From positions 186,001 through 250,000 of the IMG/VR virus record IMGVR_UViG_3300020122_000238: 64,000 nucleotides of DNA; one strand, 5' to 3'. The position numbers were made by a program, and so were the translations under genes. Of this stretch, positions 11,832 to 61,466 are shown in pieces. Each line of letters starts with the position of its first letter. Position 1 is the first letter of the stretch. Under the pieces are notes generated by a model. It saw only the letters and a list, made by a program, of their open reading frames with translations. It had not been told where the DNA came from and did not search any database.

Positions 11832-13505
11832 ATGAAACGACGTCTTGCCCTCGGGCTTCTCTTCCTGGTCGCTCTGACCCTGTACTACTACGCCCCGGCG
11901 TTCGTTCGCTGGCGGGTGAGCGAGAAACTCGCAGAGCGCTACCCGGATGTGAAGGTGGACCTCATCGAACCCCAATGGGGGAAGACGGTCCTTCACACCG
12001 TGACGTTCGATCGAGATTGGGTCTGCGGGAAGCTCGACACCGTCACGATCACCTGGAAGGACGCCATCACAATCCAGGGGGGCACCGTTCGCGTGTACCC
12101 CGAAAAGCGGCCCGCATCGACTGGGGAGGGGTCTGGCAAAGACATCACCATCACGGACCTCGAAGGTACAGTGATATCCCCCGAAGGTGTCTTTAGCTTC
12201 GGAGGTCTCTCCCTGCATGGCCCCATGGTGACCATCGACAATGTCGGGGCGCACAGGTATGGCCGAAATGCCTACCTCAATGGGGTCAAGTTCAACAAGA
12301 ACCACCTGGACTTCGTTCACGTCGATTCGGCGTCGATGGTCATCCCGGAAGACGGCCCTGACCAGCTCGGGACGTTGACCGCCACAGCTATCGAGGTCTC
12401 CCGCAACCCCGAAAAGGAATGGCGGGCGTCCATCGAACATGCCGAGATCGCGGAGCTGAAAGCGAGCGCTTCGTCAATCCGTCTCGAAGAGTACACGGGC
12501 GAAGACAAGATCCACCGAATGGCCATCCTTCTGGGGGAAGCCACCATCGAGCACCCGAAGCTCTTCAGCAAGCCTCTGACCGTGCATCAGATGCGAATCC
12601 CGGTGGATGCCTACACGTTCGAGAGCGGAGAATTCACGGTCTGGCACAACTCGGCCTTCACCCCTGTGATCAAGGGGAACTTCAGGAAGAAGACCCTTGA
12701 GGGGAAGGGCTCCTGTTCTGATTGGCTTGAGACATTGCCAGACCAGCTCAGGAACGAGTCCGTCAAGCAATTGGACATGACGGGGAACATGTCGTTCGAT
12801 GTCTCGACGGATCCTCCGCACGCCTTCTTTCTCTACACGTGCAAGGTTTCGTGTGATGTCCCGCTGTTCAAGGCTCTCAAAGAGGTGTTCGTTTACCCTA
12901 TCCTTCAGGCGGATGGATCTCCTGGTCTCCGATCGTCGGGACCGAAGGGGAAAGACTGGACGCCACTCTCCCAGGTGAGCCCTGATGTGGTCACGGCTTT
13001 GACCACCATGGAAGACCCGGGCTTCTTCCAGCATCGAGGGCTCAGTGGGATGGCCATCGAGAACTCGTTCCAGATGAACCTCAAGGCGAACAAGTTCGTG
13101 CGCGGGGGATCGACCCTCACGATGCAGCTCGCGAAGAACCTCTGGCTCACTCAGGAGAAGACCCTCGGCCGCAAGGTTCAGGAGGCCTTCTTGACGATGG
13201 GCTTGGAAAGCTGCCTCTCGAAGGAAGAGATCCTCGCGCTCTACGTGAATGTGGTCGAGTTCGGCAAGGGGCTCTACGGGATCAGCCCGGCGGCCCGGAA
13301 GTACTTCAAGACCTCGGCCATGGGCTTGGCTCCCGAGGAGGCCTTCTACCTCGTGTCGATCCTCCCCCATCCTCGGACCGCCAATCCTCCGGATGCGGCC
13401 ACCTTGACCCGCGTGAAGAAGCTGATAGCCCGGTTCACCAAGGAAGGCCGGATCCCCGATATGGGGATCAACGACAGCCCGATCGACGACGCCGGCTGGG
13501 AGTAG
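11832..13505 (+). CDS. membrane-anchored monofunctional peptidoglycan transglycosylase (GT51)
   Basis: N-terminal TM; EDPGFFQHRG, GGSTLTMQLAKNL, RKVQE, KEEILALYVN and YGISPAARKYF motifs; no transpeptidase domain. Confidence 0.9.
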   Translation: MKRRLALGLLFLVALTLYYYAPAFVRWRVSEKLAERYPDVKVDLIEPQWGKTVLHTVTFDRDWVCGKLDTVTITWKDAITIQGGTVRVYPEKRPASTGEGSGKDITITDLEGTVISPEGVFSFGGLSLHGPMVTIDNVGAHRYGRNAYLNGVKFNKNHLDFVHVDSASMVIPEDGPDQLGTLTATAIEVSRNPEKEWRASIEHAEIAELKASASSIRLEEYTGEDKIHRMAILLGEATIEHPKLFSKPLTVHQMRIPVDAYTFESGEFTVWHNSAFTPVIKGNFRKKTLEGKGSCSDWLETLPDQLRNESVKQLDMTGNMSFDVSTDPPHAFFLYTCKVSCDVPLFKALKEVFVYPILQADGSPGLRSSGPKGKDWTPLSQVSPDVVTALTTMEDPGFFQHRGLSGMAIENSFQMNLKANKFVRGGSTLTMQLAKNLWLTQEKTLGRKVQEAFLTMGLESCLSKEEILALYVNVVEFGKGLYGISPAARKYFKTSAMGLAPEEAFYLVSILPHPRTANPPDAATLTRVKKLIARFTKEGRIPDMGINDSPIDDAGWE

Positions 13506-21439: not shown

Positions 21440-22156
21440 ATGAGTCACACGTACGAATATCCCCGACCGTCTGTCACGGTCGACTGCGTTGTCTTCGGCG
21501 TCGCAGACCATCTCAAGGAGATGCACGTTCTCCTGGTCCGCCGTGGCTCCGCCCCCTTTCAGGGGTTGTGGGCTCTTCCGGGCGGGTTCGTCGAGACCTC
21601 GGATACCAGAGACCAGGGTGAGTCCCTGGACGAAGCGGCGCAACGTGAGCTGAGCGAGGAGACGGGAGCCCAAGTGGGTTTTCTGGAGCAGCTCGGCACG
21701 TATGGGACGCCCGGAAGGGATCCGCGAGGTCGAGTGATCTCGGTCGCCTACTACGCTCTGGTCCGCCTCGAAGACCATCCGGTCAAGGGTGGTGATGACG
21801 CGGCAGAGGCCAAGTGGTGGCCTCTGCCGAAAGCCCTCCGGCTATACAAGGCTTTCGACCACGACAAGATTCTCAAGGATGCTTGGGCGAGGCTACAGGC
21901 GAAGGTTCGGTATGCCCCCATCGGGTTCAACCTTCTTCCGCCGAAGTTCTCTCTGACGGAGCTGCAATCCCTCTACGAGCTGATCCTCAATCGGACGCTC
22001 GACAAGCGGAACTTCCGCAAGCGCATCCTGGCAATGGGCATCCTCAAAGAGGCGGGTGTCCAGGTTGGTGTCCCGCACCGACGAGCGTGCCTCTACAGAT
22101 TCGACAGCGTTGCTTACAAGCGAGCTGTTCGTGACGGTTTCAACTTCGAGATTTGA
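21440..22156 (+). CDS. nrtR: NrtR-family Nudix/wHTH transcriptional regulator
   Basis: [44 protein letters not shown] and [10 protein letters not shown]; adjacent to nadV. Confidence 0.85.
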
Positions 22157-22166
22157 TGGAGACCCC

Positions 22167-23552
22167 ATGACCACGTACGAAACGAACCCGATCCTCGACA
22201 CCGATAGCTACAAGCTCTCGCACCCCGAGCTGCAATACCCGGCGAACATGACGAGCATGTTCCACTACTTCGAGTCGCGCGGTGGCCGCTACGGCTCGAC
22301 CCTCTTCTTCGGCCTCAGCTATCTGTGCCAGGAGTACCTCAGCAAGGGCTTCACGCAGGACCACGTCAACGAGGCGGCCGACTTCGCCGCAGCCCACGGT
22401 GAGCCCTTCCCCAAGGCCGCCTGGGACCGTCTGGTGGCCAAGGGCGGCTACTACCCGGTGAAGATCAACGCGGTCCCGGAAGGCACGCTCGTCCCGACGC
22501 ACAACGTGCTCATGACGACGGAGTCGACGGACCCCGAGGCCCCGTGGGTCGGTTCGTGGATCGAGAACCAGCTCGTGCGCCTCTGGTATCCGATCACCGT
22601 CGCCACCCAGTCGTTCTTCATCAAGAAGATCATCTTCGAGGCCCTCGTGAAGTCCTCGGATGATCCGGTCGGCGAGATCGGATTCAAGCTCCACGACTTC
22701 GGCAGCCGTGGCGTCAGCTCGCGGGAATCGGCTGGCATCGGCGGCATGAGCCACCTGGTCAACTTCCTCGGTTCGGACACCATCGAGGGCATCCGCTACG
22801 CCAACCACTACTACACGGACAAGATGGCGGGCTTCTCGATCCCCGCGTCGGAGCACTCGACGATCACGAGCTGGGGCAAGTCGAACGAGATCGACGCCTA
22901 CCGCAACATGGTTCACCAGTTCGCGAAGCCGGGCAAGATGTTCGCCTGCGTCAGCGACTCCTACGATCTCTACAACACGGTCGAGAACATCTGGGGTGAC
23001 ATCCTCCGCGAGGAGATCAAGGAGTCGGGTGCGACCCTCGTGATCCGGCCGGACTCGGGCAATCCCTCGGAGGTCATCCTCAAGTGCCTCCAGATCTTGG
23101 AGCGCAAGGTCGGGATGACGACCAACACCAAGGGCTTCAAGGTCCTCCCGAAGTACATCCGCCTGATCCAGGGCGACGGCGTGAACGAAGAGTCGATTCG
23201 CGAGATCCTCAACGTGATGATGGCCAACGGCTACAGCGCCTCGAACATCGGATTCGGCATGGGTGGCGCTCTGCTCCAGGGTGTCAATCGCGACACCCAG
23301 CGCTTCGCCTACAAGTGCTCGGAGGTCCTGGTCGATGGTGAGACCCGCGAGGTCTTCAAGGACCCCGTCACCGACAAGGGCAAGCGCTCGAAAGCGGGCC
23401 GCGTCGACCTCATCCACGAGAACAGCGAGTTTAAGACCGTTCGGGGTACACGTCGGAACAGCGCTCTCATCTCGGTCTTTGAGAACGGCAAGATCCTGGT
23501 TCAGCCGACCCTCGCCGAGATCCGGAAAATCTCGGAACGTCACATCTTCTGA
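22167..23552 (+). CDS. nadV: nicotinamide phosphoribosyltransferase (NAMPT)
   Basis: DTDSYKLSH, LHDFGSRG, PASEHST, VSDSYD, VIRPDSG, IQGDG, FGMGGALLQ. Confidence 0.95.
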   Translation: MTTYETNPILDTDSYKLSHPELQYPANMTSMFHYFESRGGRYGSTLFFGLSYLCQEYLSKGFTQDHVNEAADFAAAHGEPFPKAAWDRLVAKGGYYPVKINAVPEGTLVPTHNVLMTTESTDPEAPWVGSWIENQLVRLWYPITVATQSFFIKKIIFEALVKSSDDPVGEIGFKLHDFGSRGVSSRESAGIGGMSHLVNFLGSDTIEGIRYANHYYTDKMAGFSIPASEHSTITSWGKSNEIDAYRNMVHQFAKPGKMFACVSDSYDLYNTVENIWGDILREEIKESGATLVIRPDSGNPSEVILKCLQILERKVGMTTNTKGFKVLPKYIRLIQGDGVNEESIREILNVMMANGYSASNIGFGMGGALLQGVNRDTQRFAYKCSEVLVDGETREVFKDPVTDKGKRSKAGRVDLIHENSEFKTVRGTRRNSALISVFENGKILVQPTLAEIRKISERHIF

Positions 23553-25310: not shown

Positions 25311-25361
25311 TTTTCCTCGCATGGGGATCTATACAAGGCTCCCCACCTTGTATAGATCCCC

Positions 25362-25568
25362 ATGCCCATCGAACTCTCTCCCCAGCTCATGAACACCCTC
25401 GCCGGCTTGATCGGTGAAGGCGCTTCCATCGATGACCTGTTCGCCCGTCTGCGGGAGGAAGGGGACATCCCGGAACACGAGTTTCCGGGCATCCTCTGCA
25501 AGGTGCTGACGACCACCTTGGCGGAGAACACCAACAACTTCCGCAACCAGCTCGTGAAGTTCCTGTGA
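25362..25568 (+). CDS. hypothetical protein
   Basis: 68 aa; GC3 bias. Confidence 0.6.
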   Translation: MPIELSPQLMNTLAGLIGEGASIDDLFARLREEGDIPEHEFPGILCKVLTTTLAENTNNFRNQLVKFL

Positions 25569-26861: not shown

Positions 26862-27106
26862 TCATGGGACGCCTGGTAGTTACCGTGAGGGGAGAATGCG
26901 AGCACCACAAGCGACGCGGACATCTACTGTGATGTCCGCGTCGCTTGTGGTGCAACGATCCTCCGCGTCGAGATGATAGGGGACTACCCCTCCACGGGCG
27001 CCCACATCTACGTGAAGTGCCAAAAATCTCCCGCCGAGCTGTCCGCGGCTATCGACGCTGCGGACGAGATCCCGCAATATTCAATCAGGACGGAAGTAGA
27101 GCGAAA

Positions 27107-28423
27107 ATGAGTAACGTAATCCTGATCGCGGGCCTCAACTACGGAGATGAGGGCAAGGGGACGACCGTCGACTACCTCGCTCGGAAGCACGAAGCGCACA
27201 CGGTCGTCCGCTACAACGGCGGAGCCCAAGCAGGCCATTCGGTGGTCCTGGAGGATGATCGGCACCACACCTTCGCCCAGTTCGGGAGCGCCACCTTCGT
27301 CCCTGGGGTGAAGACGCACCTCAGCCGGCACATGCTCATCAACCCGATCTTCATGATGTCTGAGGAGAAGCACCTCCGCACTGTCGGCGTCGAGGATGCC
27401 TTCGAACGGATGACCATCGAACGGGATGCGCTGATCACGACTCCCTACCATGTCGCCGCGAATCGCATCCGGGAGATGGCTCGCTCAAACCGCCACGGAT
27501 CTTGTGGGATGGGAATCGGCGAGACGGTGAGCAGTCACCTGTTCCACCCTCAAGAGGATCTCCGGATTGGGGATCTGGAAGGGCCAATCACCGCGCGATT
27601 GGAGCAGATCCGAGCGCGGTATTTGTGGGAGCTGGCTACTCTGCACATTCCCGAGTGCAAGTTCCGCGACTACGATTGCATCTGCCCGTTCAAGCATGAA
27701 TGGGGCATGCTCTTGAACAAGAGCCTTCTCCCCTTGATTGTGGGGTTGCTCACGGGATTTCTCAAGCTCCCGCTCAAGGTTGTCGATGAGACCTACCTCC
27801 CGCTCATCATGGGGGAAGGGACCACGATCTTCGAGGGTGCTCAGGGTGTCCTCCTTGATCAGGACTACGGGTTCCACCCCTACACGACCTGGTCCGACAC
27901 GACCTTCAGCAACGCCCTCAACCTGATCGAAGGCTTCTCTGGAGACGTAAGGAAGATCGGGATCGTTCGATCCTACATGACCCGGCACGGGGCGGGCCCA
28001 TTCGTCACGGAAGATGTCACCCTCCAGCTCCCCTCCACGAAGGTTGAGCACAACTCGCTCAATCCCTGGCAATCGAATTTCCGGGTGGGGCATTTCGACG
28101 CCTTCGCGACCAATTACGCCCTCAAGGTGATTGGGGGTGTCGACGAGATCGCCATGACACACTGCGATGTGCCAAGTAGTGGTAAAATTTGTGTTGGATA
28201 CAGGGGAGAGTTTACCCCCGAAGTGCTTCAGGATATGCCGCATGTGAAGCATATTCGTGAAGACCTCGACGTTCGTACGGGTATCACAAATGCTCTTTTC
28301 AATGTCTTTCCGGTGTACTTGACCGATGTGGCAGAGAAGGATTTCATCCCCAAAATTGAAGATTTCGTGGGGACTCCCATCACCATCAAGTCGTACGGCC
28401 CCACGGCCAAGGACAAGCGATAA
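27107..28423 (+). CDS. divergent adenylosuccinate synthetase (PurA)-like ligase
   Basis: GDEGKG, GGAQAGH, EGAQGVLLD, TRHGAGPF and SYGP are present; the aspartate-binding TTGRxR loop is replaced by HNSLNPWQSNFR. Confidence 0.85.
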   Translation: MSNVILIAGLNYGDEGKGTTVDYLARKHEAHTVVRYNGGAQAGHSVVLEDDRHHTFAQFGSATFVPGVKTHLSRHMLINPIFMMSEEKHLRTVGVEDAFERMTIERDALITTPYHVAANRIREMARSNRHGSCGMGIGETVSSHLFHPQEDLRIGDLEGPITARLEQIRARYLWELATLHIPECKFRDYDCICPFKHEWGMLLNKSLLPLIVGLLTGFLKLPLKVVDETYLPLIMGEGTTIFEGAQGVLLDQDYGFHPYTTWSDTTFSNALNLIEGFSGDVRKIGIVRSYMTRHGAGPFVTEDVTLQLPSTKVEHNSLNPWQSNFRVGHFDAFATNYALKVIGGVDEIAMTHCDVPSSGKICVGYRGEFTPEVLQDMPHVKHIREDLDVRTGITNALFNVFPVYLTDVAEKDFIPKIEDFVGTPITIKSYGPTAKDKR

Positions 28424-29897: not shown

Positions 29898-30599
29898 ATG
29901 GGACGTCCTGCCACAGACCTGACGGATTTCAGGTCTGGTAAACTAACAGCCACACATCGAGAAGGGAGCACTGCTCAAGGAGCTGCTCTCTGGTTCTGCC
30001 GTTGCGATTGCGGGGAATTCGTACTCGTTCGAGGCACCAAGCTCAAATCAGGACAGATACAATCCTGTGGGTGCGGGATGCGTGAGTACCAAAACAGCCC
30101 AAAAGACTGGGAGATTCACGGTCAGGCGGGCACCCCAAAACGCAAGCCCACATCACTTTACAACACCTGGACCCTGATGCGATCCAGGTGTTGTAAAGTG
30201 AGAAACCCTGACTATCCGTCATATGGCGGGCGGGGGGTACAAGTGTGTGAAAGATGGCTAAATAGCTTCACGGCTTTCCAAGAAGATATGGGGCCGAAGC
30301 CGGGAGCCTCATACACAATCGATCGTATCGATGTCAACGGGAACTACACCCCCGAAAATTGTAGGTGGGCCACACGTAAAGAACAGGCGAGAAACCGCCG
30401 AGATAATGTCTTTGTGTCTTACGAAGGTGAGACGCTGTGCCTCACAAACTGGTCCGAACGTTTCGGGGTTGCAGCTAGAGACATCAAACGAAGGCTGTAC
30501 TTGGGCTGGTCTATTGAGCGAGCCCTGAGAGAACCTTCTCGTATGCTACCCAAGAGGCGACATGGTGACTCCGAAAGAAGTGGGCTGGGGATCGTATAA
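29898..30599 (+). CDS. free-standing HNH homing endonuclease
   Basis: WFCRCDCG, SCGC, YGGRGVQVCERW, TIDRIDVNGNYTPENCRWAT..EQARN; AT-richer than flanks. Confidence 0.85.
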   Translation: MGRPATDLTDFRSGKLTATHREGSTAQGAALWFCRCDCGEFVLVRGTKLKSGQIQSCGCGMREYQNSPKDWEIHGQAGTPKRKPTSLYNTWTLMRSRCCKVRNPDYPSYGGRGVQVCERWLNSFTAFQEDMGPKPGASYTIDRIDVNGNYTPENCRWATRKEQARNRRDNVFVSYEGETLCLTNWSERFGVAARDIKRRLYLGWSIERALREPSRMLPKRRHGDSERSGLGIV

Positions 30600-32466: not shown

Positions 32467-32605
32467 AAAGGGTAGGGCTGGCCTTTCTACACCAGATAAA
32501 GTCTAAATCAAGAGAAATCGACGTAATTATGAGCCTTTTGGGGATCCACACCCCCAAAAGGCTCATAATTTCTAGAACGCCTACACTTCTGGTGTAGACG
32601 CCCTT

Positions 32606-35850: not shown

Positions 35851-35876
35851 TACACAGGAAGAGGGAGGGGGATCAA
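35851..35876 (-). promoter_or_regulatory. class I motif TTGATC-N16-TGTA
   Basis: 9 nt upstream of ATG 35841; one of a divergent pair. Confidence 0.75.
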
Positions 35877-35891
35877 CCATATTTTCCCTGG

Positions 35892-35917
35892 TTGATCCCC
35901 CTCCCGGTGTTTTTGTA
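35892..35917 (+). promoter_or_regulatory. class I motif TTGATC-N16-TGTA
   Basis: 10 nt upstream of ATG 35928. Confidence 0.75.
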
Positions 35918-39251: not shown

Positions 39252-39994
39252 CATTGGCCAACGCCAGGCAGACGCACAAGTTTCAGGGCCCCGTTGTGGC
39301 TAACGAGAGGCGCCAGCTCGGGACTCCGGAACACGTCGAACAGGTGCATATCCTGACCGTCGACCGTGCAGCCCAACGAGACAAGGGTGACCGTCTGGCT
39401 GTAGTCCGTGTGCGCCATGTTGTGTCGCCACCCACAACCCTGAATGACGCGGACGAAGCGCCCCTTGGAGTCCTTCGAAAGAGAGACATTGGCTTCCCCT
39501 CGGATGCCCTTGTACCCCACGCCCTCGAAGTGCCAGCCGTAGTTCTCGACGAAGCCCGGGTGCGAGAGAATGGCGTTGTCGAGGACCCAGTGCTTGCCGA
39601 CGTTGCACACGAGGCCCTCAGGGTTCCCTTGCGCAGCGAGAGCCGTGTCAATCCGGCCGCTATGGGCGAGCATTGCAGCCGTTGAAGAATTGAACGGCTG
39701 AATCGAAGGCCCGAGAGTAACAACTTTCTGCGTCCAGATGAGATCCGCCAGCTTCGGGGTGAGTAGAGAACAGCCAAGAAGATCCGCGAGGTGCTGCTCC
39801 GTTTCGGCGGAAGCGTTGATCCGCACGCCCTCGATTTTGAGCGCATCCGAGAAGACCTGGAACTCGGCGTGGTGATCGCCATGGTCGGAGGTGACCGTGG
39901 ACCACAAGATAGGGTCAAAGGTCCCTTCTGCGACGAGTGCTCGGATTGCTTGTTCGCGAGCAGGGCCAGCGGACGGGGGAAGGTTCAGGCTCAT
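39251..39994 (-). CDS. hypothetical protein
   Basis: 247 aa with GC3 bias; ENYGWH and HNMAHTDYSQ conserved-looking motifs. Confidence 0.75.
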   Translation of the reverse strand: MSLNLPPSAGPAREQAIRALVAEGTFDPILWSTVTSDHGDHHAEFQVFSDALKIEGVRINASAETEQHLADLLGCSLLTPKLADLIWTQKVVTLGPSIQPFNSSTAAMLAHSGRIDTALAAQGNPEGLVCNVGKHWVLDNAILSHPGFVENYGWHFEGVGYKGIRGEANVSLSKDSKGRFVRVIQGCGWRHNMAHTDYSQTVTLVSLGCTVDGQDMHLFDVFRSPELAPLVSHNGALKLVRLPGVGQ

Positions 39995-40027
39995 ACTGAG
40001 GATCTTCCTAAAAAAACCCTATACACG

Positions 40028-41065
40028 ATGGCCATGATCGGACTCCGGGTGCCTCCCGAAACTGCTCAACTCCTGAAGCAGATCGACCTCAAGGGATTTG
40101 GGGTCCCCGAGCCTATGGATCAAGCGCACATCACGCTGCTCCATTTGGGGGATGATGTTCCGATTGAGTCTCTGACCGAGGCAATTCGGGTGTTGTACAC
40201 AGTGGCCTCGAAGACCAGACCATTTGCTGTGCAGACGAGCCGAGCGACAACCTTCCCGCCCCAAGATGGGAAGAAGACTCCCATGATTGCTCAGGTGGAC
40301 TCCAATGCCCTCCACGACTTCCACCGAGCCCTACAAGAAGCCTTCGAGGCTGCCGGGATCGACTTCTCGAAGAAGTGGCCCGAGTTCAAGCCTCATGTGA
40401 CTTTGGGGTATTCTAAAGACCCTTTGGTCGATGCAGACCACGTATTCGATGAGACTTTCCCTACGGTCGAGTGGGGCGCCCATGAAGCTGTGCTTTTTGG
40501 GGGTGACAAAGGAAAACAGACCATGATGGTAACAACCCCCTTCTCTCTGAGCCCCTTTCGCCAGGCTGTCCGACAGGCCATGTTCCGAGCTGCCAACCGG
40601 CCCTACGAACACGACCAGGAGGCTCAAAGCGAGAAGAAGGAGCTTCTTAAGAAGCTCGAATTGCTTTCCCAAGCAGCCTATGCTTCGGGAGACAACGCAA
40701 TGGCGTCCTTCGCAGAAAGTCTGGGGATGCAACTCGAACGAGCGGACACAGCCTGGAACTTCAGTCTCCCCCAAGAACGGAAACTCCGGGAAGGCCTACA
40801 ACAGTACCATCACCTGATGTCTCACCCGGCTGAGCTTGATCGACTGTTTGAAGAGAAGAACCGAGCCCCTCAAGTCAGCCCCGCGGAGCAGACGAGAAAC
40901 CTTCGGATCCGAATCAACCAGCTCCTCGATGCCGCGAAGCAAGATGGGGACAACTGGGTGATCAGTTTCGCAACCAATATCGGGAACATGGTGCGAAACA
41001 ACCGACAGCTATCTCCCGCTCAAAGCAACGCGCTGGAGAAAGCATTCAAGAAGTACCGTCTTTGA
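40028..41065 (+). CDS. 2H phosphoesterase (LigT/Acb1-like) with C-terminal extension
   Basis: two HxT motifs: AHITLLHLG and KPHVTLGY. Confidence 0.75.
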   Translation: MAMIGLRVPPETAQLLKQIDLKGFGVPEPMDQAHITLLHLGDDVPIESLTEAIRVLYTVASKTRPFAVQTSRATTFPPQDGKKTPMIAQVDSNALHDFHRALQEAFEAAGIDFSKKWPEFKPHVTLGYSKDPLVDADHVFDETFPTVEWGAHEAVLFGGDKGKQTMMVTTPFSLSPFRQAVRQAMFRAANRPYEHDQEAQSEKKELLKKLELLSQAAYASGDNAMASFAESLGMQLERADTAWNFSLPQERKLREGLQQYHHLMSHPAELDRLFEEKNRAPQVSPAEQTRNLRIRINQLLDAAKQDGDNWVISFATNIGNMVRNNRQLSPAQSNALEKAFKKYRL

Positions 41066-41435
41066 GATTCGAGCCCCAGTAAATGACGTCATTCTGAGAG
41101 TACGACCTCGCGTGCCCCATTTCTTCGAGCCACGCGAGACCGTGCCGTAGAAGGGCAGAGGAGACCCCCGACGTCTTCCGCCACGCTTCGAGTTGGGGCC
41201 ACGTCCGAGGCTCCGACAAGTACTTGGAGATGGGGGCAGTCCACCCCACCCAACAGGGGTCCGTGAGAGTTGGAGCCCGCACATCCGAGAGCCGATGGTC
41301 GAACTTGTTCCTGGGAACCCCAGGAACAAGTTCGGGTTTTTTGGTGCGGGAGGGTCTCTTCACAGACGGGACTTTTGCTGCGGGGGCCACGTTGGAAACA
41401 GGGAACCCCAAGTCGTCTTCTGTCTCTTGCCACAT
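41046..41435 (-). CDS. hypothetical protein
   Basis: 129 aa; GGTGTA (41445-41450) 9 nt upstream. Confidence 0.6.
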   Translation of the reverse strand: MWQETEDDLGFPVSNVAPAAKVPSVKRPSRTKKPELVPGVPRNKFDHRLSDVRAPTLTDPCWVGWTAPISKYLSEPRTWPQLEAWRKTSGVSSALLRHGLAWLEEMGHARSYSQNDVIYWGSNLKDGTS

Positions 41436-43865: not shown

Positions 43866-43942
43866 TGGACACTATTCCCCCGCGGATCCCGATCCCAAGC
43901 CGTACTAGTACGGCTTGGGATCGGGATCCGCGGGAAGCGGGC

Positions 43943-46673: not shown

Positions 46674-46715
46674 AAAAAAGCCCCCGGAGCAGCACGCTGC
46701 TCCGGGGGCTTTTTT
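46674..46715. terminator. bidirectional intrinsic terminator
   Basis: perfect 20-bp inverted repeat AAAAAAGCCCCCGGAGCAGC / GCTGCTCCGGGGGCTTTTTT between convergent genes. Confidence 0.9.
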
Positions 46716-49348: not shown

Positions 49349-49684
49349 CTACGATGCTCTTGAGCCATTCGACCGCGGAATCAACAGCGGGCAAACCCGG
49401 CGGGCGTGGTGGAAAGCCACGCCATTTTCTCTAGAACTCCTCGTCGAGCCTCTCCCACCCCGTGAGATACGGGAGTTTCGGTGGGGTGAGTGGCGGGGTT
49501 CAGGATTGGAGCAAGGCTCCACAAGAATCGAACCTACCCCGATTGGGAAGTAGGTTGCTATCTCCTTCGAACAACGCGTGCAGATGTAGAAGTGCTTTGC
49601 CCAAAGCCCAATCGCACCGGACTCAACCTGAGTCCGGTGCGATTGGGGGCAAAAGAGGTGCCCAGCGTTATACGTCGTCGCCAT
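49349..49684 (-). CDS. possible Zn-ribbon protein containing an internal palindrome
   Basis: FCPQ...YICTRC; overlaps the stop of the upstream gene. Confidence 0.4.
   Translation of the reverse strand: MATTYNAGHLFCPQSHRTQVESGAIGLWAKHFYICTRCSKEIATYFPIGVGSILVEPCSNPEPRHSPHRNSRISRGGRGSTRSSRENGVAFHHARRVCPLLIPRSNGSRAS
49607..49647. repeat. perfect 19-bp inverted repeat
   Basis: CCCAATCGCACCGGACTCA-ACC-TGAGTCCGGTGCGATTGGG. Confidence 0.9.
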
Positions 49685-50422: not shown

Positions 50423-50498
50423 GACGTCTCCAAAAAAAGGAAGGTCTGTCCCGCTTTCGGGACAGACCTTCCTTACACCTCAACCAGAGCGAACCTGC

Positions 50499-55114: not shown

Positions 55115-55687
55115 ATGTTGACGAAGAAGATCCTGACGGCGACGAAGCATTACCTGAGCAAGACCCCCGAAGAGAACCGCGCCTATGGCCTGGTTACGGA
55201 TGGGAAGATCAACCCCGGCACCTTCCGCTTCATGCCGGTGCTGGCGTGGCTTCGCAAGAAGCCCGAGAGGAGCAGGATTGTCCTCTCGGGCTTCTTGCTG
55301 CGCATGACGGAAGGTGCTTTCGTGGGAGGCCTCGACTGGTCCATCCCGCTGAACCCGGAAACCGAGAACGACGCCGCGAACCTTCTCTCGTCCTTCGGGT
55401 GGGACAATCGAGTGTGGCCTTCAGACCCGGGCTGGCCCGACGATCTGCCGGATGAGGAACACACGCTGCACGGGATGCTCAAGAAGAAGGGCATCTTGGA
55501 GACGCTCACGTTCCCGCCGAAGGAATCGGGCAACAGGGTGATGACGCTTCATGTGCTGAAGGTGTCGAACCCCTTCCCGCTGCCGATCCTGGTTGCTGAT
55601 GAAGACCGTCAGGAGGTGGCCCCCGAGATGCTCTCGAAACTTCGAGAGCTGGTCGCCGACCCGAGCTGCTTCTCGCTGTCCTCCTAG
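55115..55687 (+). CDS. hypothetical protein
   Basis: 190 aa; GGTGTA (55099-55104) 10 nt upstream. Confidence 0.75.
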   Translation: MLTKKILTATKHYLSKTPEENRAYGLVTDGKINPGTFRFMPVLAWLRKKPERSRIVLSGFLLRMTEGAFVGGLDWSIPLNPETENDAANLLSSFGWDNRVWPSDPGWPDDLPDEEHTLHGMLKKKGILETLTFPPKESGNRVMTLHVLKVSNPFPLPILVADEDRQEVAPEMLSKLRELVADPSCFSLSS

Positions 55688-57040: not shown

Positions 57041-57586
57041 ATGGGAATCCTCGATCGTGTTGTGCGTCGCGTCTGTGAAAAAGTCTCCAAGTGGGCCCCT
57101 TCGTGGCGCATGATCACCCGAGGTGACAACGAGCCCTACCTGAAGAGGTACTACTTCTTCAGGCGTGAATGGGTTCTGGAATGGTTCGAGACTCAGGGTT
57201 GGGAGACCCCGAGGTTCGTGGCCAAGATCCCCTCGCTCTACCTTCACCATTTCGTGGCGGGGGATGATGAGGTCGAGCTGCACAACCATCCCTTCAAGAA
57301 GAGCCTCGCCCTCGTTCTGACGGGCGGGTATCACGAGGAACGTAAGGTGGGGAACGAGGTCCACAGCCGGATCGTCCCGCCCTGGTCCTTCAACCTCATC
57401 GACGCCAATACCTTCCACAAGGTGGAACTCCTCGACAAGGAGAAGGGCGCCTGGACCATCTTCCTTTCGGGAGAGCGTACCCAGCGCTGGGGTTTTTGGC
57501 ATCCGGAGACGTTCGAGTACGTCGACTGGGAAAACCATGTGGACGCCCGCCCCAACCCCGAGGCAAGGCTTCACCATGCCCCCTAG
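57041..57586 (+). CDS. cupin-like protein
   Basis: LYLHHF...D..LHNHPF..SLALVL.GGY.E...FHKV...WTIF. Confidence 0.65.
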   Translation: MGILDRVVRRVCEKVSKWAPSWRMITRGDNEPYLKRYYFFRREWVLEWFETQGWETPRFVAKIPSLYLHHFVAGDDEVELHNHPFKKSLALVLTGGYHEERKVGNEVHSRIVPPWSFNLIDANTFHKVELLDKEKGAWTIFLSGERTQRWGFWHPETFEYVDWENHVDARPNPEARLHHAP

Positions 57587-57908
57587 AATGTGGGCTGGGG
57601 GGCCCCTCTACCCTGACTGGTTGGTCATCAACCAACTCGTTGAGACGACGGCAAGACACCCAGGGATACGACAACAATCAGTCATTACCAGGATCACTGA
57701 CGGGTTGGTGTACGTCCGATCAAATACCGGCATCGGAGATATTTGGTATCGAGCAGAGCACTTCGTGGACGAATGGCGGGTGCTTCATACCCCCCTGAAG
57801 AACGATCTCGCTCCCGAGGACTACAGGTGGGAGCCCAAGCCTGTCGAGCCCCCCAAGCCCGCTCCGACGTGGCATGAGCTCCTCATTGACGATGACTTCG
57901 ACATCTAG
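57576..57908 (+). CDS. hypothetical protein with C-terminal tag
   Basis: ends PTWHELLIDDDFDI. Confidence 0.7.
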   Translation: MPPRMWAGGPLYPDWLVINQLVETTARHPGIRQQSVITRITDGLVYVRSNTGIGDIWYRAEHFVDEWRVLHTPLKNDLAPEDYRWEPKPVEPPKPAPTWHELLIDDDFDI

Positions 57909-57933
57909 TCGAAGTCATCGTCAATGAGGAGCT
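57877..57933. repeat. perfect 26-bp inverted repeat formed by the 3' ends of two convergent genes
   Basis: AGCTCCTCATTGACGATGACTTCGAC-ATCTA-GTCGAAGTCATCGTCAATGAGGAGCT. Confidence 0.95.
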
Positions 57934-58621
57934 GCTCCCAGGCAGTGGGCCAGAAGATGTGGACCCTGGGGGTGGCCGGAGGGGGAGGGGGCTGCGTCGG
58001 CACCCCGGGAAGGTACCTCCCCATCAGAGAGGGGGTCTCGGTCGGATCGAACTCCGGGACTTCAACTCGACGTCGCATGTTTTCCAAAGCCCGCGTGTTG
58101 AAGACCATGTCCCCAACGTGTTCGTGAGCCGTTAACCCCTCGCCGGAAATCCGATCCATGGCGTCGAAGACCCGCTGGTCCTCTTCCTCTCGAAGACGCT
58201 CTTGCGCGAACATCTCTCGTGTCCTCACAACATCCTGCCACACAGTATTAGGGGCAACCTGCACGAAGGAGGGCGTAAACTCCTCTCGGAAAACCGAGTA
58301 CCTGGGGTCAGGAGAGGGTTCTCCAATCCCGTAGACGTTGCGGAACGTTTCTTGGGAGACGCACAGATCCACGTGGACCATACGCTCCATGATCTCCATT
58401 TCCTCCGATAGGTTGAGGGATGAGGGCAGCAAAGGAAGCAACTGTATGGGGGGTGCCGGTAGGATGGGGAGCGCCGGTAGGACCGGTAGGATGGGGAGCG
58501 CCGGTAGGACCGGTAGGAGCCCCATCCTCCTGATCACTTCATTCGCACGCTCACGTATGTCTTGGAGCACCAGATGCTCCAGAACTCGCCGGATGAGAGG
58601 GACACCATCACGAGGGGGCAT
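57905..58621 (-). CDS. hypothetical Pro-rich protein with C-terminal tag
   Basis: ends PTAWEQLLIDDDFD; GGTGTA (58631-58636) 9 nt upstream. Confidence 0.65.
   Translation of the reverse strand: MPPRDGVPLIRRVLEHLVLQDIRERANEVIRRMGLLPVLPALPILPVLPALPILPAPPIQLLPLLPSSLNLSEEMEIMERMVHVDLCVSQETFRNVYGIGEPSPDPRYSVFREEFTPSFVQVAPNTVWQDVVRTREMFAQERLREEEDQRVFDAMDRISGEGLTAHEHVGDMVFNTRALENMRRRVEVPEFDPTETPSLMGRYLPGVPTQPPPPPATPRVHIFWPTAWEQLLIDDDFD
58456..58518. repeat. 27-bp tandem repeat (about 2.3 copies) encoding LPx repeats
   Basis: unit CCGGTAGGATGGGGAGCGCCGGTAGGA. Confidence 0.85.
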
Positions 58622-59223: not shown

Positions 59224-59649
59224 ATGAGCGAAGACCTGTATGATTTGGACAGCTATTGGGAGTTGAGGGTTCTACCTCCTCGGCCTCCCGAACCTGAGAT
59301 CGAAGCAGCGCCAGAACCCATTCAAGAACTCACTTTCACTCCGAGGGGAGTGTACTTGGGCCTATTCACAGCCCTACCCCAAGACACCAATGAGGGTGTG
59401 GAGCTTACCGATACCAGATACGCTCGCGCATCTGTGAATCCCAGATTCACATCAAACAGTAGGGGGGAATCGGTAGCTGAGATCACACACCGATTCCCCC
59501 CTATGAGCACTCCCGTGGTTGTGATGGGTGGGGGTCTTTGGGATGCCCCTGTGGGGGGCAATCTCCTCTACTTTTCAAGCCTAGCCGTGAATCTCCGCGT
59601 CGACCTCGGAATGAACGCGGAGATTCACCTCACCGTCTCTGCTGACTAG
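59224..59649 (+). CDS. tail-fibre-associated-like protein with N-terminal acidic-YW-Pro tag
   Basis: VYLGLFTALP...YARA...LWDAPVGGNLLY resembles a small family often annotated as phage tail fibre protein. Confidence 0.65.
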   Translation: MSEDLYDLDSYWELRVLPPRPPEPEIEAAPEPIQELTFTPRGVYLGLFTALPQDTNEGVELTDTRYARASVNPRFTSNSRGESVAEITHRFPPMSTPVVVMGGGLWDAPVGGNLLYFSSLAVNLRVDLGMNAEIHLTVSAD

Positions 59650-60059: not shown

Positions 60060-60299
60060 TTAGACGTAACGTGGATCCCGCAAGTACGGAAACAGCTCTT
60101 GCATCGAACCAGGCTTGGCCGGAGGGAACCCTTCACCATCCGGCACCCCCAGCATCTTGCTGAAGTTCGGCTCGCCCGTTTCAGCCGCCATATCATTCAG
60201 GGTATCGGCGAAAGACGCTGCCAGATCCTCCGGAAGATCGGGGTTGGCGTCGATGGCCTTTTGTTCTGCGGGCGTCCAGTTCGTCGTCTTCATCGTCAC
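60060..60299 (-). CDS. hypothetical protein
   Basis: 79 aa coupled to the upstream gene. Confidence 0.6.
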   Translation of the reverse strand: MTMKTTNWTPAEQKAIDANPDLPEDLAASFADTLNDMAAETGEPNFSKMLGVPDGEGFPPAKPGSMQELFPYLRDPRYV

Positions 60300-61429
60300 T
60301 TCGCCGTGTTGCGCAGCTCGGTCGAGCTGATGTCCCAGCGGCCCGGGACGTCCTTGAACAGAAAGACAAGGATGTCGACGACATCCTTGTGGGCGTAGAT
60401 GATGTCACTGCCCGTCTTGTACTCACCCTTGACGAGCCGACCGAGCACGTAAAAGCGCGTGCAGTGGGCCGAGAACTCCTCCAGCAAGGGCGCGACTTCG
60501 ATGCCCCACTTGGGGTCGAGCATCGTCGCCAGGGTGTCCGCCCCGAGCACGAAGGCAGCACCCGGGAAGGCCTTCGCCTTGTCGAGGAAGAGCGGGTCGT
60601 TCTCCGACAAGAGGTAGTTACGCCCTCGCATCCCAGCCACCCGTTGCAACAGCTCCGGGACCGTGACAGGCGTCTTGTGGACCGGGTTGATGGTGGTCAT
60701 GTGGACCAACGTCTGGTAGAACCTGTAGGCGAGAAGATGCGCTTCCCGGCCCCCCTTCTCGTGCCCATCATGGAAGGGATTGAAGCTCCCCGGGTAGATA
60801 AGGGTCGTCAGGGGGTTGATGTCCGCAGCCGTTCCGCGCGTCCCATCCGCCTTGAAGTAGGGGTGAGCGAAGAGACGAGCCCGCGCTTTGTCCATGGCCT
60901 CGATGGGCTCGAACTTCACCCCGAGGATGTCGGGGTCGACCGGGAGGCCCATCGCTCGCGAGAGGATGTTCAACCCCATCGAATCGGCGATCATCCCGTC
61001 CACCGTGCGCTGCTCCCAGCCCACTCCTTTGGGGATGACAGCGGAGGCGATGTAGCAGCCCCCATCACCGAAGGCCGCGACGAAGATCCGGTGATCTCCC
61101 CGGTGCTCCCGAGTCGAAGCGACCGAAGCAGCGAGGCCAATCCCGATTGCCTTCGAGCCAGGCTTCACGGCCCGGAGGTACGCGGTCATGGCGAGGTCGA
61201 GCGCGATGTTCTCGTCGCAGTACTTCTCGGGGATGAATCCGAGATGGCGCGCGGTGGCCTCGGGCTCGTACGGGAAGCACGCTTCGATGAAGAAGTTAGA
61301 AATGCCCGGAGGAGCCCAGAGGCGGGACTGGACCCCTGCTCCGGCCCCCGTGGCGATGACGACGACCCGTGGAGCGTCAGCCCCAAGGTCGCGGAGGATT
61401 TCGATGTTGCGTGTGGTGTTGGTGCTCAT
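60296..61429 (-). CDS. CinA-like domain fused to a nicotinamide-nucleotide adenylyltransferase (NMNAT)-like domain
   Basis: YPGSFNPFHDGH (HxGH), FVLGADT, DISSTELR; N-terminal TGAG...GIGLAASVAS...RGDHRIFVA. Confidence 0.75.
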   Translation of the reverse strand: MSTNTTRNIEILRDLGADAPRVVVIATGAGAGVQSRLWAPPGISNFFIEACFPYEPEATARHLGFIPEKYCDENIALDLAMTAYLRAVKPGSKAIGIGLAASVASTREHRGDHRIFVAAFGDGGCYIASAVIPKGVGWEQRTVDGMIADSMGLNILSRAMGLPVDPDILGVKFEPIEAMDKARARLFAHPYFKADGTRGTAADINPLTTLIYPGSFNPFHDGHEKGGREAHLLAYRFYQTLVHMTTINPVHKTPVTVPELLQRVAGMRGRNYLLSENDPLFLDKAKAFPGAAFVLGADTLATMLDPKWGIEVAPLLEEFSAHCTRFYVLGRLVKGEYKTGSDIIYAHKDVVDILVFLFKDVPGRWDISSTELRNTAK

Positions 61430-61440
61430 GTTGTCGGCTC

Positions 61441-61466
61441 TACAAGACGAGAAAGCCACGGATCAA
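61441..61466 (-). promoter_or_regulatory. class I motif TTGATC-N16-TGTA
   Basis: 11 nt upstream of ATG 61429. Confidence 0.75.

What the first reader, a model, noticed from the sequence alone, without database searches (positions are those of the whole stretch)
57877..57933. Two convergent genes end in the identical tag through a perfect 26-bp hairpin: possible snapshot of tag copying
Seen: ORF 57576..57908 (+) and ORF 57905..58621 (-) overlap at their stops. Both encode LLIDDDFD from identical DNA, giving a 26-bp perfect inverted repeat with a 5-nt loop. The genes are otherwise unrelated. Inference: the tag was copied to the opposite strand by template switching or fold-back repair, or is homogenised by gene conversion. 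That would be a mechanism for recruiting new genes into the tagged set. The hairpin may also act as a bidirectional terminator, although it has no T tails.
Basis: partly seen in the sequence, partly recalled or inferred. Interest (0 to 1): 0.75.

Follow-up and report, generated by a model that had tools for sequence, protein, structure and literature searches.

The report
Template-switch hairpin joining two gene tails
Two convergent genes of an uncultured huge phage end in identical DNA because a short-range replication template switch made their two already existing tail motifs into a perfect 26-bp hairpin, so this is a known mutation type and not a new way of handing a tag to a new gene.

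Summary
A perfect 26-bp inverted repeat (57877-57902 / 57908-57933, loop ATCTA) covers the last codons of a + gene (57576-57908) and a - gene (57905-58621), whose stops share CTAG. Both end in LLIDDDFD.

The window belongs to a 275-kb soil phage contig. A relative with about 86% DNA identity has the same gene pair meeting on CTAG, but with two different tags (+: WHEHLDDEDDFD*, -: WEQLLKEDDI*) and no hairpin. Distant homologues of the - gene end in LLxEDxF*, like the relative. Both tags therefore predate the hairpin, and the window's - tail is the derived state.

The window's central 21 nt are the exact reverse complement of the relative's. This inverts the 5-nt spacer and moves the terminal Ile codon from one gene to the other. 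Differences are concentrated in the central 45 nt (17/45 against 13/125 in the flanks).

Arm homogenisation plus spacer inversion is the known signature of template switching at quasi-palindromes. The genome has many long perfect hairpins (62 against about 1 expected) and several other spacer inversions.

The recruitment idea is not supported. A terminator role is possible but untested, and there are no T tails. An assembly artefact could not be tested with reads.

The parts
57877..57902 (+). Left arm of the perfect 26-bp inverted repeat. It encodes (E)LLIDDDFD, the end of the + gene.
57903..57907 (.). 5-nt spacer ATCTA. It is the reverse complement of the relative's spacer TAGAT. It holds the + gene's last codon ATC (Ile) and part of both stop codons.
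57908..57933 (-). Right arm of the inverted repeat. On the - strand it encodes (Q)LLIDDDFD, the end of the - gene.
57870..57940 (.). Extended quasi-palindrome (33-nt arms, 91% complementary) that includes both Trp codons of the tags.
57899..57919 (.). 21 nt (CGACATCTAGTCGAAGTCATC) that are the exact reverse complement of the relative's orthologous GATGACTTCGACTAGATGTCG. This is the footprint of the template switch and spacer inversion.
   Evidence: sequences
57905..57908 (.). CTAG shared by the two overlapping stop codons. The same arrangement is found in the relative and in outgroup L030.
57576..57908 (+). The + gene (110 aa, orphan) with a Pro-rich linker and a C-terminal tag. It is conserved only in the one relative and is not called in the public annotation.
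57905..58621 (-). The - gene (238 aa). It belongs to a family with the conserved PEFEIxSNPxxxLxDIRxRRFDLIDR region and a C-terminal ...TAWExLL..DD tag.

Best explanation
The two convergent genes each already carried a C-terminal tag of the same family (about P-T-(A)-W-[EH]-x-L-L-acidic-hydrophobic). Because the genes abut on CTAG, their tag-coding ends formed an imperfect inverted repeat (a quasi-palindrome, about 61% alike in the relative). In the lineage of the window's phage, one or two short-range template switches occurred during DNA synthesis, in which the nascent strand copied the opposite arm. These switches replaced part of each arm with the reverse complement of the other and inverted the 5-nt spacer. 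The result is a perfect 26-bp hairpin, two identical peptide tails (LLIDDDFD), one extra codon in the - gene, and transfer of the terminal Ile codon from the - gene to the + gene. The change was probably tolerated because each overwritten tail was replaced by another valid tag. Shown here: the repeat itself, the older state with two different tags in the relative and in the outgroups, the reverse-complement relation, the clustering of differences, and the abundance of the same two signatures elsewhere in both genomes. Inferred: that the mechanism is replicative template switching rather than some other arm-to-arm repair; the number and order of the events; and whether the hairpin has since been kept because it is useful at the RNA 3' ends.
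For: The relative G001 has about 86% DNA identity and is collinear over 127 kb. In it the + tail is TGG CAT GAG CAC CTC GAT GAC GAG GAT GAC TTC GAC TAG and the - tail is TGG GAG CAG CTC CTC AAG GAA GAC GAC ATC TAG. There is no hairpin at its junction (z = -1.65 and -0.46). The window's 57899-57919 is the reverse complement of the relative's 126161-126181 over 21 nt. The window's GACATCTAGTC corresponds to the relative's GACTAGATGTC, which is a spacer inversion. Differences between the two genomes are 17/45 in the central columns against 13/125 in the flanks, Fisher p = 1.3e-4, and 41 nt next to the hairpin are identical. For polarity, the outgroup - gene tails are CTC CTC AAT GAG GAT CCC TTC TAG (L030) and CTT CTT CAA GAA GAC CCT TTT TGA (L031). 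These match the relative's pattern of LL-x-E-D-x-hydrophobic-stop. The window's - tail is one codon longer, and its distal 12 nt GATGACTTCGAC equal the + gene tail in both genomes. Twelve other tags are nearly identical between the two genomes, so the junction tags changed abruptly. The lineage is prone to such events. It has 62 perfect IRs with stem >= 11 against about 1 in shuffles, and 25 with stem >= 14 against 0.05. Exact spacer inversions occur at win 55254 (GCAGGATTG against CAATCCTGC), win 32525 and win 41300. One-arm homogenisations are seen in the relative. A scan found 14 and 16 reverse-complement replacement segments in the two genomes. The known mechanism is described in PMC8604942 (arm homogenisation and spacer inversion in coding DNA), PMC5941160 and PMC7202029.
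Against: Only two genomes carry the + gene, so the polarity of the + arm changes (CAC->CTC, GAT->ATT, loss of GAG) is not resolved. A single switch from a relative-like ancestor does not explain every difference, so at least two events or extra point changes are needed. The assembly has no read-level confirmation. Selection for a hairpin could give the same end state through ordinary mutations, although the 21-nt reverse-complement block argues for a block event. The gene calls used for the genome-wide context come from my own crude caller.
Confidence: 0.75

Rival explanations
1. The hairpin is kept, or was built, by selection as an RNA element at the convergent junction: a bidirectional terminator or a 3'-end stabiliser. 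On this view the identical tags are a by-product of the need for pairing. This rival concerns why the hairpin persists and can coexist with a template-switch origin.
For: Long perfect hairpins lie mostly just 3' of genes. Seven of 23 convergent junctions carry a perfect stem of 13 or more. Seven of 21 convergent junctions have a 60-nt MFE <= -30 kcal/mol, against 1 of 40 CDS interiors. Some hairpins are conserved with paired changes, such as 148630, which is 25/1 in the window's genome and 22/7 in the relative. The relative has a different 22-bp hairpin 70 nt from the same junction, inside the - gene (L005 6566-6617), so each genome has one strong hairpin near this junction.
Against: There is no U tract on either strand. 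Most of the longest hairpins lack T tails. Two thirds of convergent junctions have no strong hairpin. The relative has no hairpin at the junction itself. No RNA data exist for this uncultured phage.
Confidence: 0.3
2. Tag acquisition: one of the two genes had no tag and obtained it when the other gene's tag was copied onto the opposite strand.
For: A palindrome centred on a stop codon does write the same peptide end on the opposite strand. An unused example is the 28/5 hairpin at genome 274959-275019, which puts an orphan ...EDDL* on the + strand. The + gene is lineage-specific. Outgroup L030 has an untagged 74-aa gene at that place and L031 has none.
Against: In the relative both genes already have tags, and the tags differ (WHEHLDDEDDFD and WEQLLKEDDI). 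These tails are only about 61% alike at the DNA level. The - gene's tag is ancient. No other convergent pair in the genome shares tag DNA.
Confidence: 0.05
3. Assembly fold-back or chimera artefact of the metagenome assembler.
For: The contig comes from a single assembly. The only public run found holds four 151-nt pieces, none of which covers the junction.
Against: The repeat lies 31 kb from the contig end. It sits inside a region collinear with the relative on both sides, and both reading frames stay intact and end in valid tags. It is only 57 nt long. Equally long hairpins at other sites are reproduced in the relative, whose junction region is identical in 8 independent assemblies.
Confidence: 0.03
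4. Coincidence: two copies of a constrained motif happen to use the same codons.
For: Both tails belong to one motif family, and the genome has codon bias.
Against: Even given the same peptide, the chance of the same 8 codons is about 0.004. The peptides of other tags differ widely. The 26-nt run is far outside the distribution of 378 tag pairs. The spacer inversion is not explained by coincidence.
Confidence: 0.01

Closest known systems
Quasipalindrome-associated template-switch mutations (Ripley model; E. coli reporters in PMC7202029; perfect-IR maintenance in Proteobacteria in PMC5941160)
   Same: An imperfect inverted repeat is converted towards a perfect one by a clustered multi-nucleotide change. 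The new sequence is the reverse complement of the other arm.
   Different: Here the two arms are the coding 3' ends of two different convergent genes, so one event rewrites two proteins. The events are inferred from comparative data in an uncultured phage and were not measured.
Template switching in yeast coding DNA giving arm homogenisation and spacer inversion (PMC8604942)
   Same: Both signatures are present, arm homogenisation and spacer inversion. Several neighbouring amino acids are replaced at once, which mimics positive selection or convergence.
   Different: The yeast cases lie within single genes and have short arms. Here the arm is 26 bp, spans a gene-gene overlap, and moves a terminal codon from one gene to the other.
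Minute hairpin-flanked inversions in chloroplast non-coding DNA (from my own knowledge: Kelchner and Wendel 1996; not checked here)
   Same: Loop inversion between close relatives, flanked by perfect stems, recurring at many hairpins of one genome.
   Different: Those are non-coding organelle hairpins. Here several lie in or at the ends of phage protein-coding genes.
Bidirectional intrinsic terminators between convergent genes
   Same: The position is exactly between two convergent genes. The stem is strong in both transcripts. One classic example exists in this window (46674-46715, A6...T6).
   Different: There is no U tract on either side. The stem is 26 bp at 50% GC and is made of coding sequence. 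No RNA 3' ends are known.

Membership tests
Template-switch (quasipalindrome) mutation | An imperfect inverted repeat existed at the site before the event | tested here: met
   In the relative the two tag-coding tails are 22/36 alike and meet on the same CTAG. The outgroup - gene tails match the relative.
Template-switch (quasipalindrome) mutation | A clustered multi-nucleotide change raises arm complementarity | tested here: met
   17/45 central columns differ against 13/125 flank columns, p = 1.3e-4. The arms go from about 61% alike to 26/26 perfect.
Template-switch (quasipalindrome) mutation | The new sequence equals the reverse complement of adjacent ancestral sequence | tested here: met
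   Window 57899-57919 is the reverse complement of the relative's 126161-126181 over 21 nt.
Template-switch (quasipalindrome) mutation | Spacer inversion can accompany the event | tested here: met
   Spacer ATCTA against TAGAT. The 11-mer GACATCTAGTC against GACTAGATGTC.
Template-switch (quasipalindrome) mutation | Polarity: the perfect repeat is the derived state | tested here: met
   This holds for the - arm. Outgroups L030 and L031 share the relative's LL-x-E-D-x-hydrophobic-stop, while the window's tail is one codon longer and carries the + gene's GATGACTTCGAC. The + arm has no outgroup.
Template-switch (quasipalindrome) mutation | Arises during DNA synthesis by strand switching | not testable with these tools
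   This needs a genetic reporter or mutation-accumulation data.
Intrinsic (Rho-independent) bidirectional terminator | A stable stem-loop directly 3' of the stop codon in each transcript | tested here: met
   -61 kcal/mol on both strands. For each gene the second arm lies just after its stop.
Intrinsic (Rho-independent) bidirectional terminator | A U tract following the stem on both strands | tested here: not met
   The 3' flanks are GCTCCCAGGC (+) and CATGCCACGT (-). The terminator scan does not report the site.
Intrinsic (Rho-independent) bidirectional terminator | RNA 3' ends at the stem | not testable with these tools
   No RNA run holds the sequence.
Concerted evolution (gene conversion) among dispersed tag copies | DNA identity between the tags of other gene pairs beyond what the peptide requires | tested here: not met
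   The longest shared run among the other 377 pairs is 14 nt, the median is 5 nt and the mean identity is 43%.
Mobile palindromic element (REP/MITE-like) | Several copies of the same sequence in the genome | tested here: not met
   The arm sequence occurs only at this locus, allowing up to 3 mismatches. The other hairpins have unrelated sequences.
Assembly fold-back artefact | Reads do not support the palindrome; the repeat lies at a contig end or a break of synteny | tested here: inconclusive
   The repeat is not at a contig end and synteny holds on both sides. No reads cover the site.

The most novel reading that the evidence does not exclude
Palindrome-forming template switches at convergent gene junctions may be a general route by which this clade of huge phages spreads its C-terminal docking tag. 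A hairpin centred on the stop codon of a tagged gene writes the same tag and stop on the opposite strand, where an incoming convergent ORF can capture it. On this reading the lineage-specific + gene originally obtained its tag this way, and the present perfect hairpin is a second round at the same site.
Probability: 0.08. Interest if true: 0.7.

Novelty: new member of a known kind. Interest (0 to 1): 0.42.

Why it matters
This is a clear natural example in which one short-range template switch rewrites the C-terminal motifs of two different proteins at once and passes a terminal codon from one gene to the other. A reader without relatives would take the identical tails for convergence, selection or domain transfer. 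The case therefore warns against reading identical short motifs in adjacent inverted genes as functional copying. It also points to a huge-phage lineage in which long perfect hairpins and spacer inversions are unusually frequent. That lineage could be used to study how template switching and hairpin function shape phage genomes. The C-terminal tag family itself has no known function and may be the more interesting object.

Tried and rejected
1. Read support: the one public run found (X1) holds only four 151-nt pieces and none covers the junction. The artefact question therefore stays open at the read level.
2. More relatives: two pattern scans of viral contigs found only the same relative. Both metagenome scans found nothing. 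A word-based protein search with the - gene found one other cluster. The + gene has no other homologue. All eight contigs carrying the relative's - gene are identical at the junction, so they count as one taxon.
3. Tag function: the tagged proteins have no Pfam or PHROG family, except a zinc-finger protein and a neighbouring cysteine-dioxygenase-like gene. No paper on such a tag was found. I tested the idea that the tag docks on the phage's actin-like protein, and the complex prediction gave 'no answer'. This is not evidence either way.
4. The AAA+ ATPase that neighbours the outgroup homologues has no homologue in the window's contig or the relative's contig.
5. No cultured phage carries the - gene family.
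6. The AlphaFold2 model of the - gene product is poor (pLDDT 64, pTM 0.25), so I ran no fold search. It only suggests that the tag forms a short helix (residues 227-233) after a disordered stretch.
7. Rfam has no match in the window.
8. A second apparent 'shared tag' hairpin at genome 274959-275019 turned out to lie after the end of the real + gene. Its + strand copy of ...EDDL* is attached to no gene.

Full report
OBSERVATION

The sequence at 57860-57940 reads ...CCG ACG TGG CAT GAG CTC CTC ATT GAC GAT GAC TTC GAC ATC TAG TCG AAG TCA TCG TCA ATG AGG AGC TGC TCC CAG GCA GTG GG....
- A perfect 26-nt inverted repeat lies at 57877-57902 / 57908-57933 with a 5-nt loop ATCTA. The arms extend to 33 nt at 91% complementarity.
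- The + ORF ends ...PAPTWHELLIDDDFDI*. The - ORF (57905-58621) ends ...FWPTAWEQLLIDDDFD*. The two stops share CTAG at 57905-57908.
- The 24-mer occurs only at these two places in the window and in the whole genome.
- Either transcript would fold at about -61 kcal/mol, z about -9.5.
- Given the same peptide, the chance of using the same 8 codons is about 0.004 with this genome's codon usage.
- Among 378 pairs of tag-coding tails in the genome, this pair's 26-nt identical run stands alone (next longest 14 nt, median 5 nt).

CONTEXT

- The window is bases 186001-250000 of a 275.3-kb linear IMG/VR virus contig from a soil metagenome, with 58% GC and a CheckV completeness estimate of 58%.
- It is a tailed huge phage. 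It has a large terminase, portal, head protease, RNR, NAD ligase, ExoV/Dda-like helicase and UvsX-like recombinase. In the window it has NAMPT, adenylosuccinate synthetase, a transglycosylase and a LigT/Acb1-like protein.
- About 20 or more ORFs end in a motif of the form [P]T[A]W[ED]x[LI]L, then acidic residues, then a hydrophobic residue. With my crude gene calls, 14 C-termini match against 1.4 expected from internal positions. The 'tagged set' is therefore real.
- The public annotation calls the - gene but not the + gene. It calls a 51-aa antisense ORF instead.
- The + ORF is nevertheless the likely gene. Its codon score is positive (+5.6 against -12.5 for the antisense ORF). Its protein is conserved in the relative, with a 55-residue insertion there.

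THE RELATIVE

- One related phage contig (IMGVR_UViG_3300035181_001402, 128 kb, handle G001) is collinear with genome positions 118-245 kb at about 80-92% DNA identity.
- Eight independent contigs of that phage are identical at the junction.
- The same two genes converge there on CTAG, but the tails differ. The + tail is TGG CAT GAG CAC CTC GAT GAC GAG GAT GAC TTC GAC TAG (WHEHLDDEDDFD*). The - tail is TGG GAG CAG CTC CTC AAG GAA GAC GAC ATC TAG (WEQLLKEDDI*).
- There is no hairpin at that junction. The fold z-scores are -1.65 and -0.46.
- The two tails are only 22/36 alike.

Both genes therefore carried a tag before the hairpin existed.

POLARITY

- A profile search of 1.84 billion representative proteins with the - gene found 12 distant homologues.
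- Most of them end in the same motif. Examples are ...KAHIFWPTSWEHLLQEDPF...KAHIFYPTAWERLLNEDPF...RRTAWERVLDIDDLEFPT and ...RRTSWQRIDADDFDF.
- The DNA of two outgroup loci gives CTC CTC AAT GAG GAT CCC TTC TAG (L030) and CTT CTT CAA GAA GAC CCT TTT TGA (L031).
- Codon by codon, these match the relative's LL-x-E-D-x-hydrophobic-stop pattern.
- The window's - tail (CTC CTC ATT GAC GAT GAC TTC GAC TAG) is one codon longer. Its distal 12 nt GATGACTTCGAC are identical to the + gene tail in both genomes.

The window's - tail is therefore derived and was overwritten from the + arm. The proximal AGCTCCTCA of the window's + arm matches the - gene in the relative and in L030. This suggests a transfer in the opposite direction too, but the + gene has no outgroup, so that step is inferred.

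SIGNATURE OF THE EVENT

- The window's 57899-57919 (CGACATCTAGTCGAAGTCATC) is the exact reverse complement of the relative's GATGACTTCGACTAGATGTCG.
- Within it, the 11-mer GACATCTAGTC corresponds to GACTAGATGTC in the relative, so the 5-nt spacer is inverted.
- As a consequence the codon ATC, which ends the - gene in the relative (...DDI*), ends the + gene in the window (...FDI*).
- Differences between the two genomes are concentrated in the central 45 alignment columns (17/45) compared with the flanks (13/125), p = 1.3e-4. A 41-nt stretch next to the hairpin is identical.
- Twelve other tags are almost unchanged between the two genomes, with 0-2 residues different. The junction tags therefore changed abruptly.

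THE LINEAGE IS PRONE TO THIS

- The genome has 62 perfect hairpin-type repeats with stem >= 11 and loop <= 12 (about 1 in shuffles), and 25 with stem >= 14 (0.05 in shuffles). Their sequences are unrelated and stems reach 28 bp.
- Comparison with the relative shows three patterns:
  - Exact spacer inversions at win 55254-55298 (GCAGGATTG against CAATCCTGC, inside a CDS), win 32525-32570 and win 41300-41334.
  - Paired changes that keep a stem perfect, at genome 148630.
  - Perfect repeats in one genome opposite quasi-repeats in the other, with clustered changes in one arm, in both directions.
- A simple scan finds 14 segments in the window's genome and 16 in the relative that are replaced by the reverse complement of the orthologous neighbourhood.

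The tag hairpin is thus one member of a class. What is special is only that its two arms are the coding ends of two genes that carry the same kind of motif. That probably made the swap harmless.

FUNCTION OF THE HAIRPIN

- There is no T tract on either side, so the hairpin is not a canonical intrinsic terminator.
- Long hairpins in this genome lie mostly just downstream of genes. Seven of 23 convergent junctions carry a perfect stem >= 13. Seven of 21 have a 60-nt MFE <= -30 kcal/mol, against 1 of 40 CDS interiors.
- The relative has a different 22-bp hairpin 70 nt from this junction, created by a 36-nt in-frame palindromic insertion in the - gene.
- A role at RNA 3' ends is therefore plausible. 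It may explain retention, but it is untested, and most convergent junctions lack such a structure.

WHAT REMAINS OPEN

- The assembly could not be checked with reads. Against an artefact: the repeat is internal, synteny and both reading frames are intact, and similar hairpins are reproduced in the relative's independent assemblies.
- The tag's function is unknown.
  - The - gene product is predicted to be mostly helices and disorder, with the tag as a short helix after a Pro-rich stretch. This fits a short docking motif.
  - A test of docking onto the phage's actin-like protein gave no answer.

VERDICT

The reading as recruitment of a new gene into the tagged set is not. This is a new, instructive example of a known mutational process, of moderate interest.

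Noticed in passing
whole genome; in the window at 43879-43934 (28/0), 26902-26953 (23/6), 25319-25365 (20/7), 46674-46715 (20/2), 30153-30201, 32525-32570, 49607-49647, 55254-55298, 35863-35905, 50437-50474, 41300-41334: There is a large excess of long perfect hairpin-type inverted repeats with unrelated sequences: 62 with stem >= 11 against about 1 expected, and 25 with stem >= 14. Most lie just 3' of genes, and few have T tails. 43879-43934 is a perfect 56-bp palindrome between convergent genes.
   Followed up: partly
window 55254-55298 (inside CDS 55115-55687 +), 32525-32570, 41300-41334; relative G001 123362-123406, 99154-99201, 108828-108864: The hairpin loops are exact or near-exact reverse complements between the two phage genomes, while the stems are kept. 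One of these spacer inversions lies inside a protein-coding gene.
   Followed up: partly
window ORF ends at about 20441, 20635, 34532, 35156, 45644, 47713, 48014, 49668, 54794, 55684, 57028, 57905, 57908; elsewhere in the genome, e.g. 2262, 65079, 140624, 143235, 155427, 262144, 268068, 275006: A C-terminal motif family (about [P]T[A]W[ED]x[LI]L, then acidic residues, then a hydrophobic residue, usually after a Pro-rich stretch) is found on 20 or more otherwise unrelated, mostly orphan proteins. It is almost invariant between orthologues in the relative and is present in distant huge-phage homologues. No known function and no literature were found.
   Followed up: partly
L005 6436-6446 (relative, + gene): In all 8 assemblies of the relative the + gene has C5 where the window has C6, so its tag lies in the -1 frame. 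The site reads GAG CCC CCA AAC, which contains the canonical slippery heptamer C CCA AAC. Downstream differences from the window are synonymous in the tag frame. This could be programmed -1 frameshifting giving tagged and untagged forms, or a recent frameshift.
   Followed up: partly
L005 6566-6617 (relative, inside the - gene): A 36-nt in-frame palindromic insertion (22-nt arms at 95%, 8-nt loop) adds 12 residues (SMWGHSQPHMEY) compared with the window. It sits at the centre of a small pre-existing palindrome (window GGTACC region at about 58003-58013).
   Followed up: no
window 58456-58518: A perfect 27-nt tandem repeat (2.3 copies) in the - gene duplicates LPVLPALPI. The relative has a single copy.
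   Followed up: no
L036 3784-4821 and 4822-5082 (genome 63784-65082, outside the window): An actin-like gene (Pfam Volactin PF25216, E = 8.5e-76) is followed directly by an 86-aa ORF ending in the tag ...TPTAWDVLLGDEAI. That ORF contains a 22/1 perfect hairpin. The gene order recalls parM-parR. A complex prediction of the actin-like protein with a tag peptide gave no answer.
   Followed up: partly
window 57720-57875 (-): The public (JGI) gene call places a 51-aa ORF here, antisense to the conserved + gene, and omits the + gene. Its codon score is -12.5 against +5.6 for the + gene. It is probably a miscall.
   Followed up: yes
genome 274959-275019 (outside the window): A 28/5 perfect hairpin has a right arm that covers the last four codons and the stop (...EDDL*) of a tagged - strand ORF. 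The left arm therefore carries an orphan ...EDDL* on the + strand that is attached to no gene.
   Followed up: yes
genome-wide; window 55684-55687, 57905-57908, 59646-59649: Seven convergent gene pairs overlap by exactly 4 nt at their stop codons, according to my crude gene calls. This arrangement seems habitual in this phage and is also seen at the outgroup locus L030 3453-3456.
   Followed up: no
window 22056-23552, 26945-28423, 39791-41065, 60296-61459, 11832-13505: Auxiliary genes are present: NAMPT, adenylosuccinate synthetase, a LigT/2H-phosphoesterase with a weak Acb1 (anti-CBASS) match, a cytidylyltransferase-like protein, and a protein with a transglycosylase domain.
   Followed up: no
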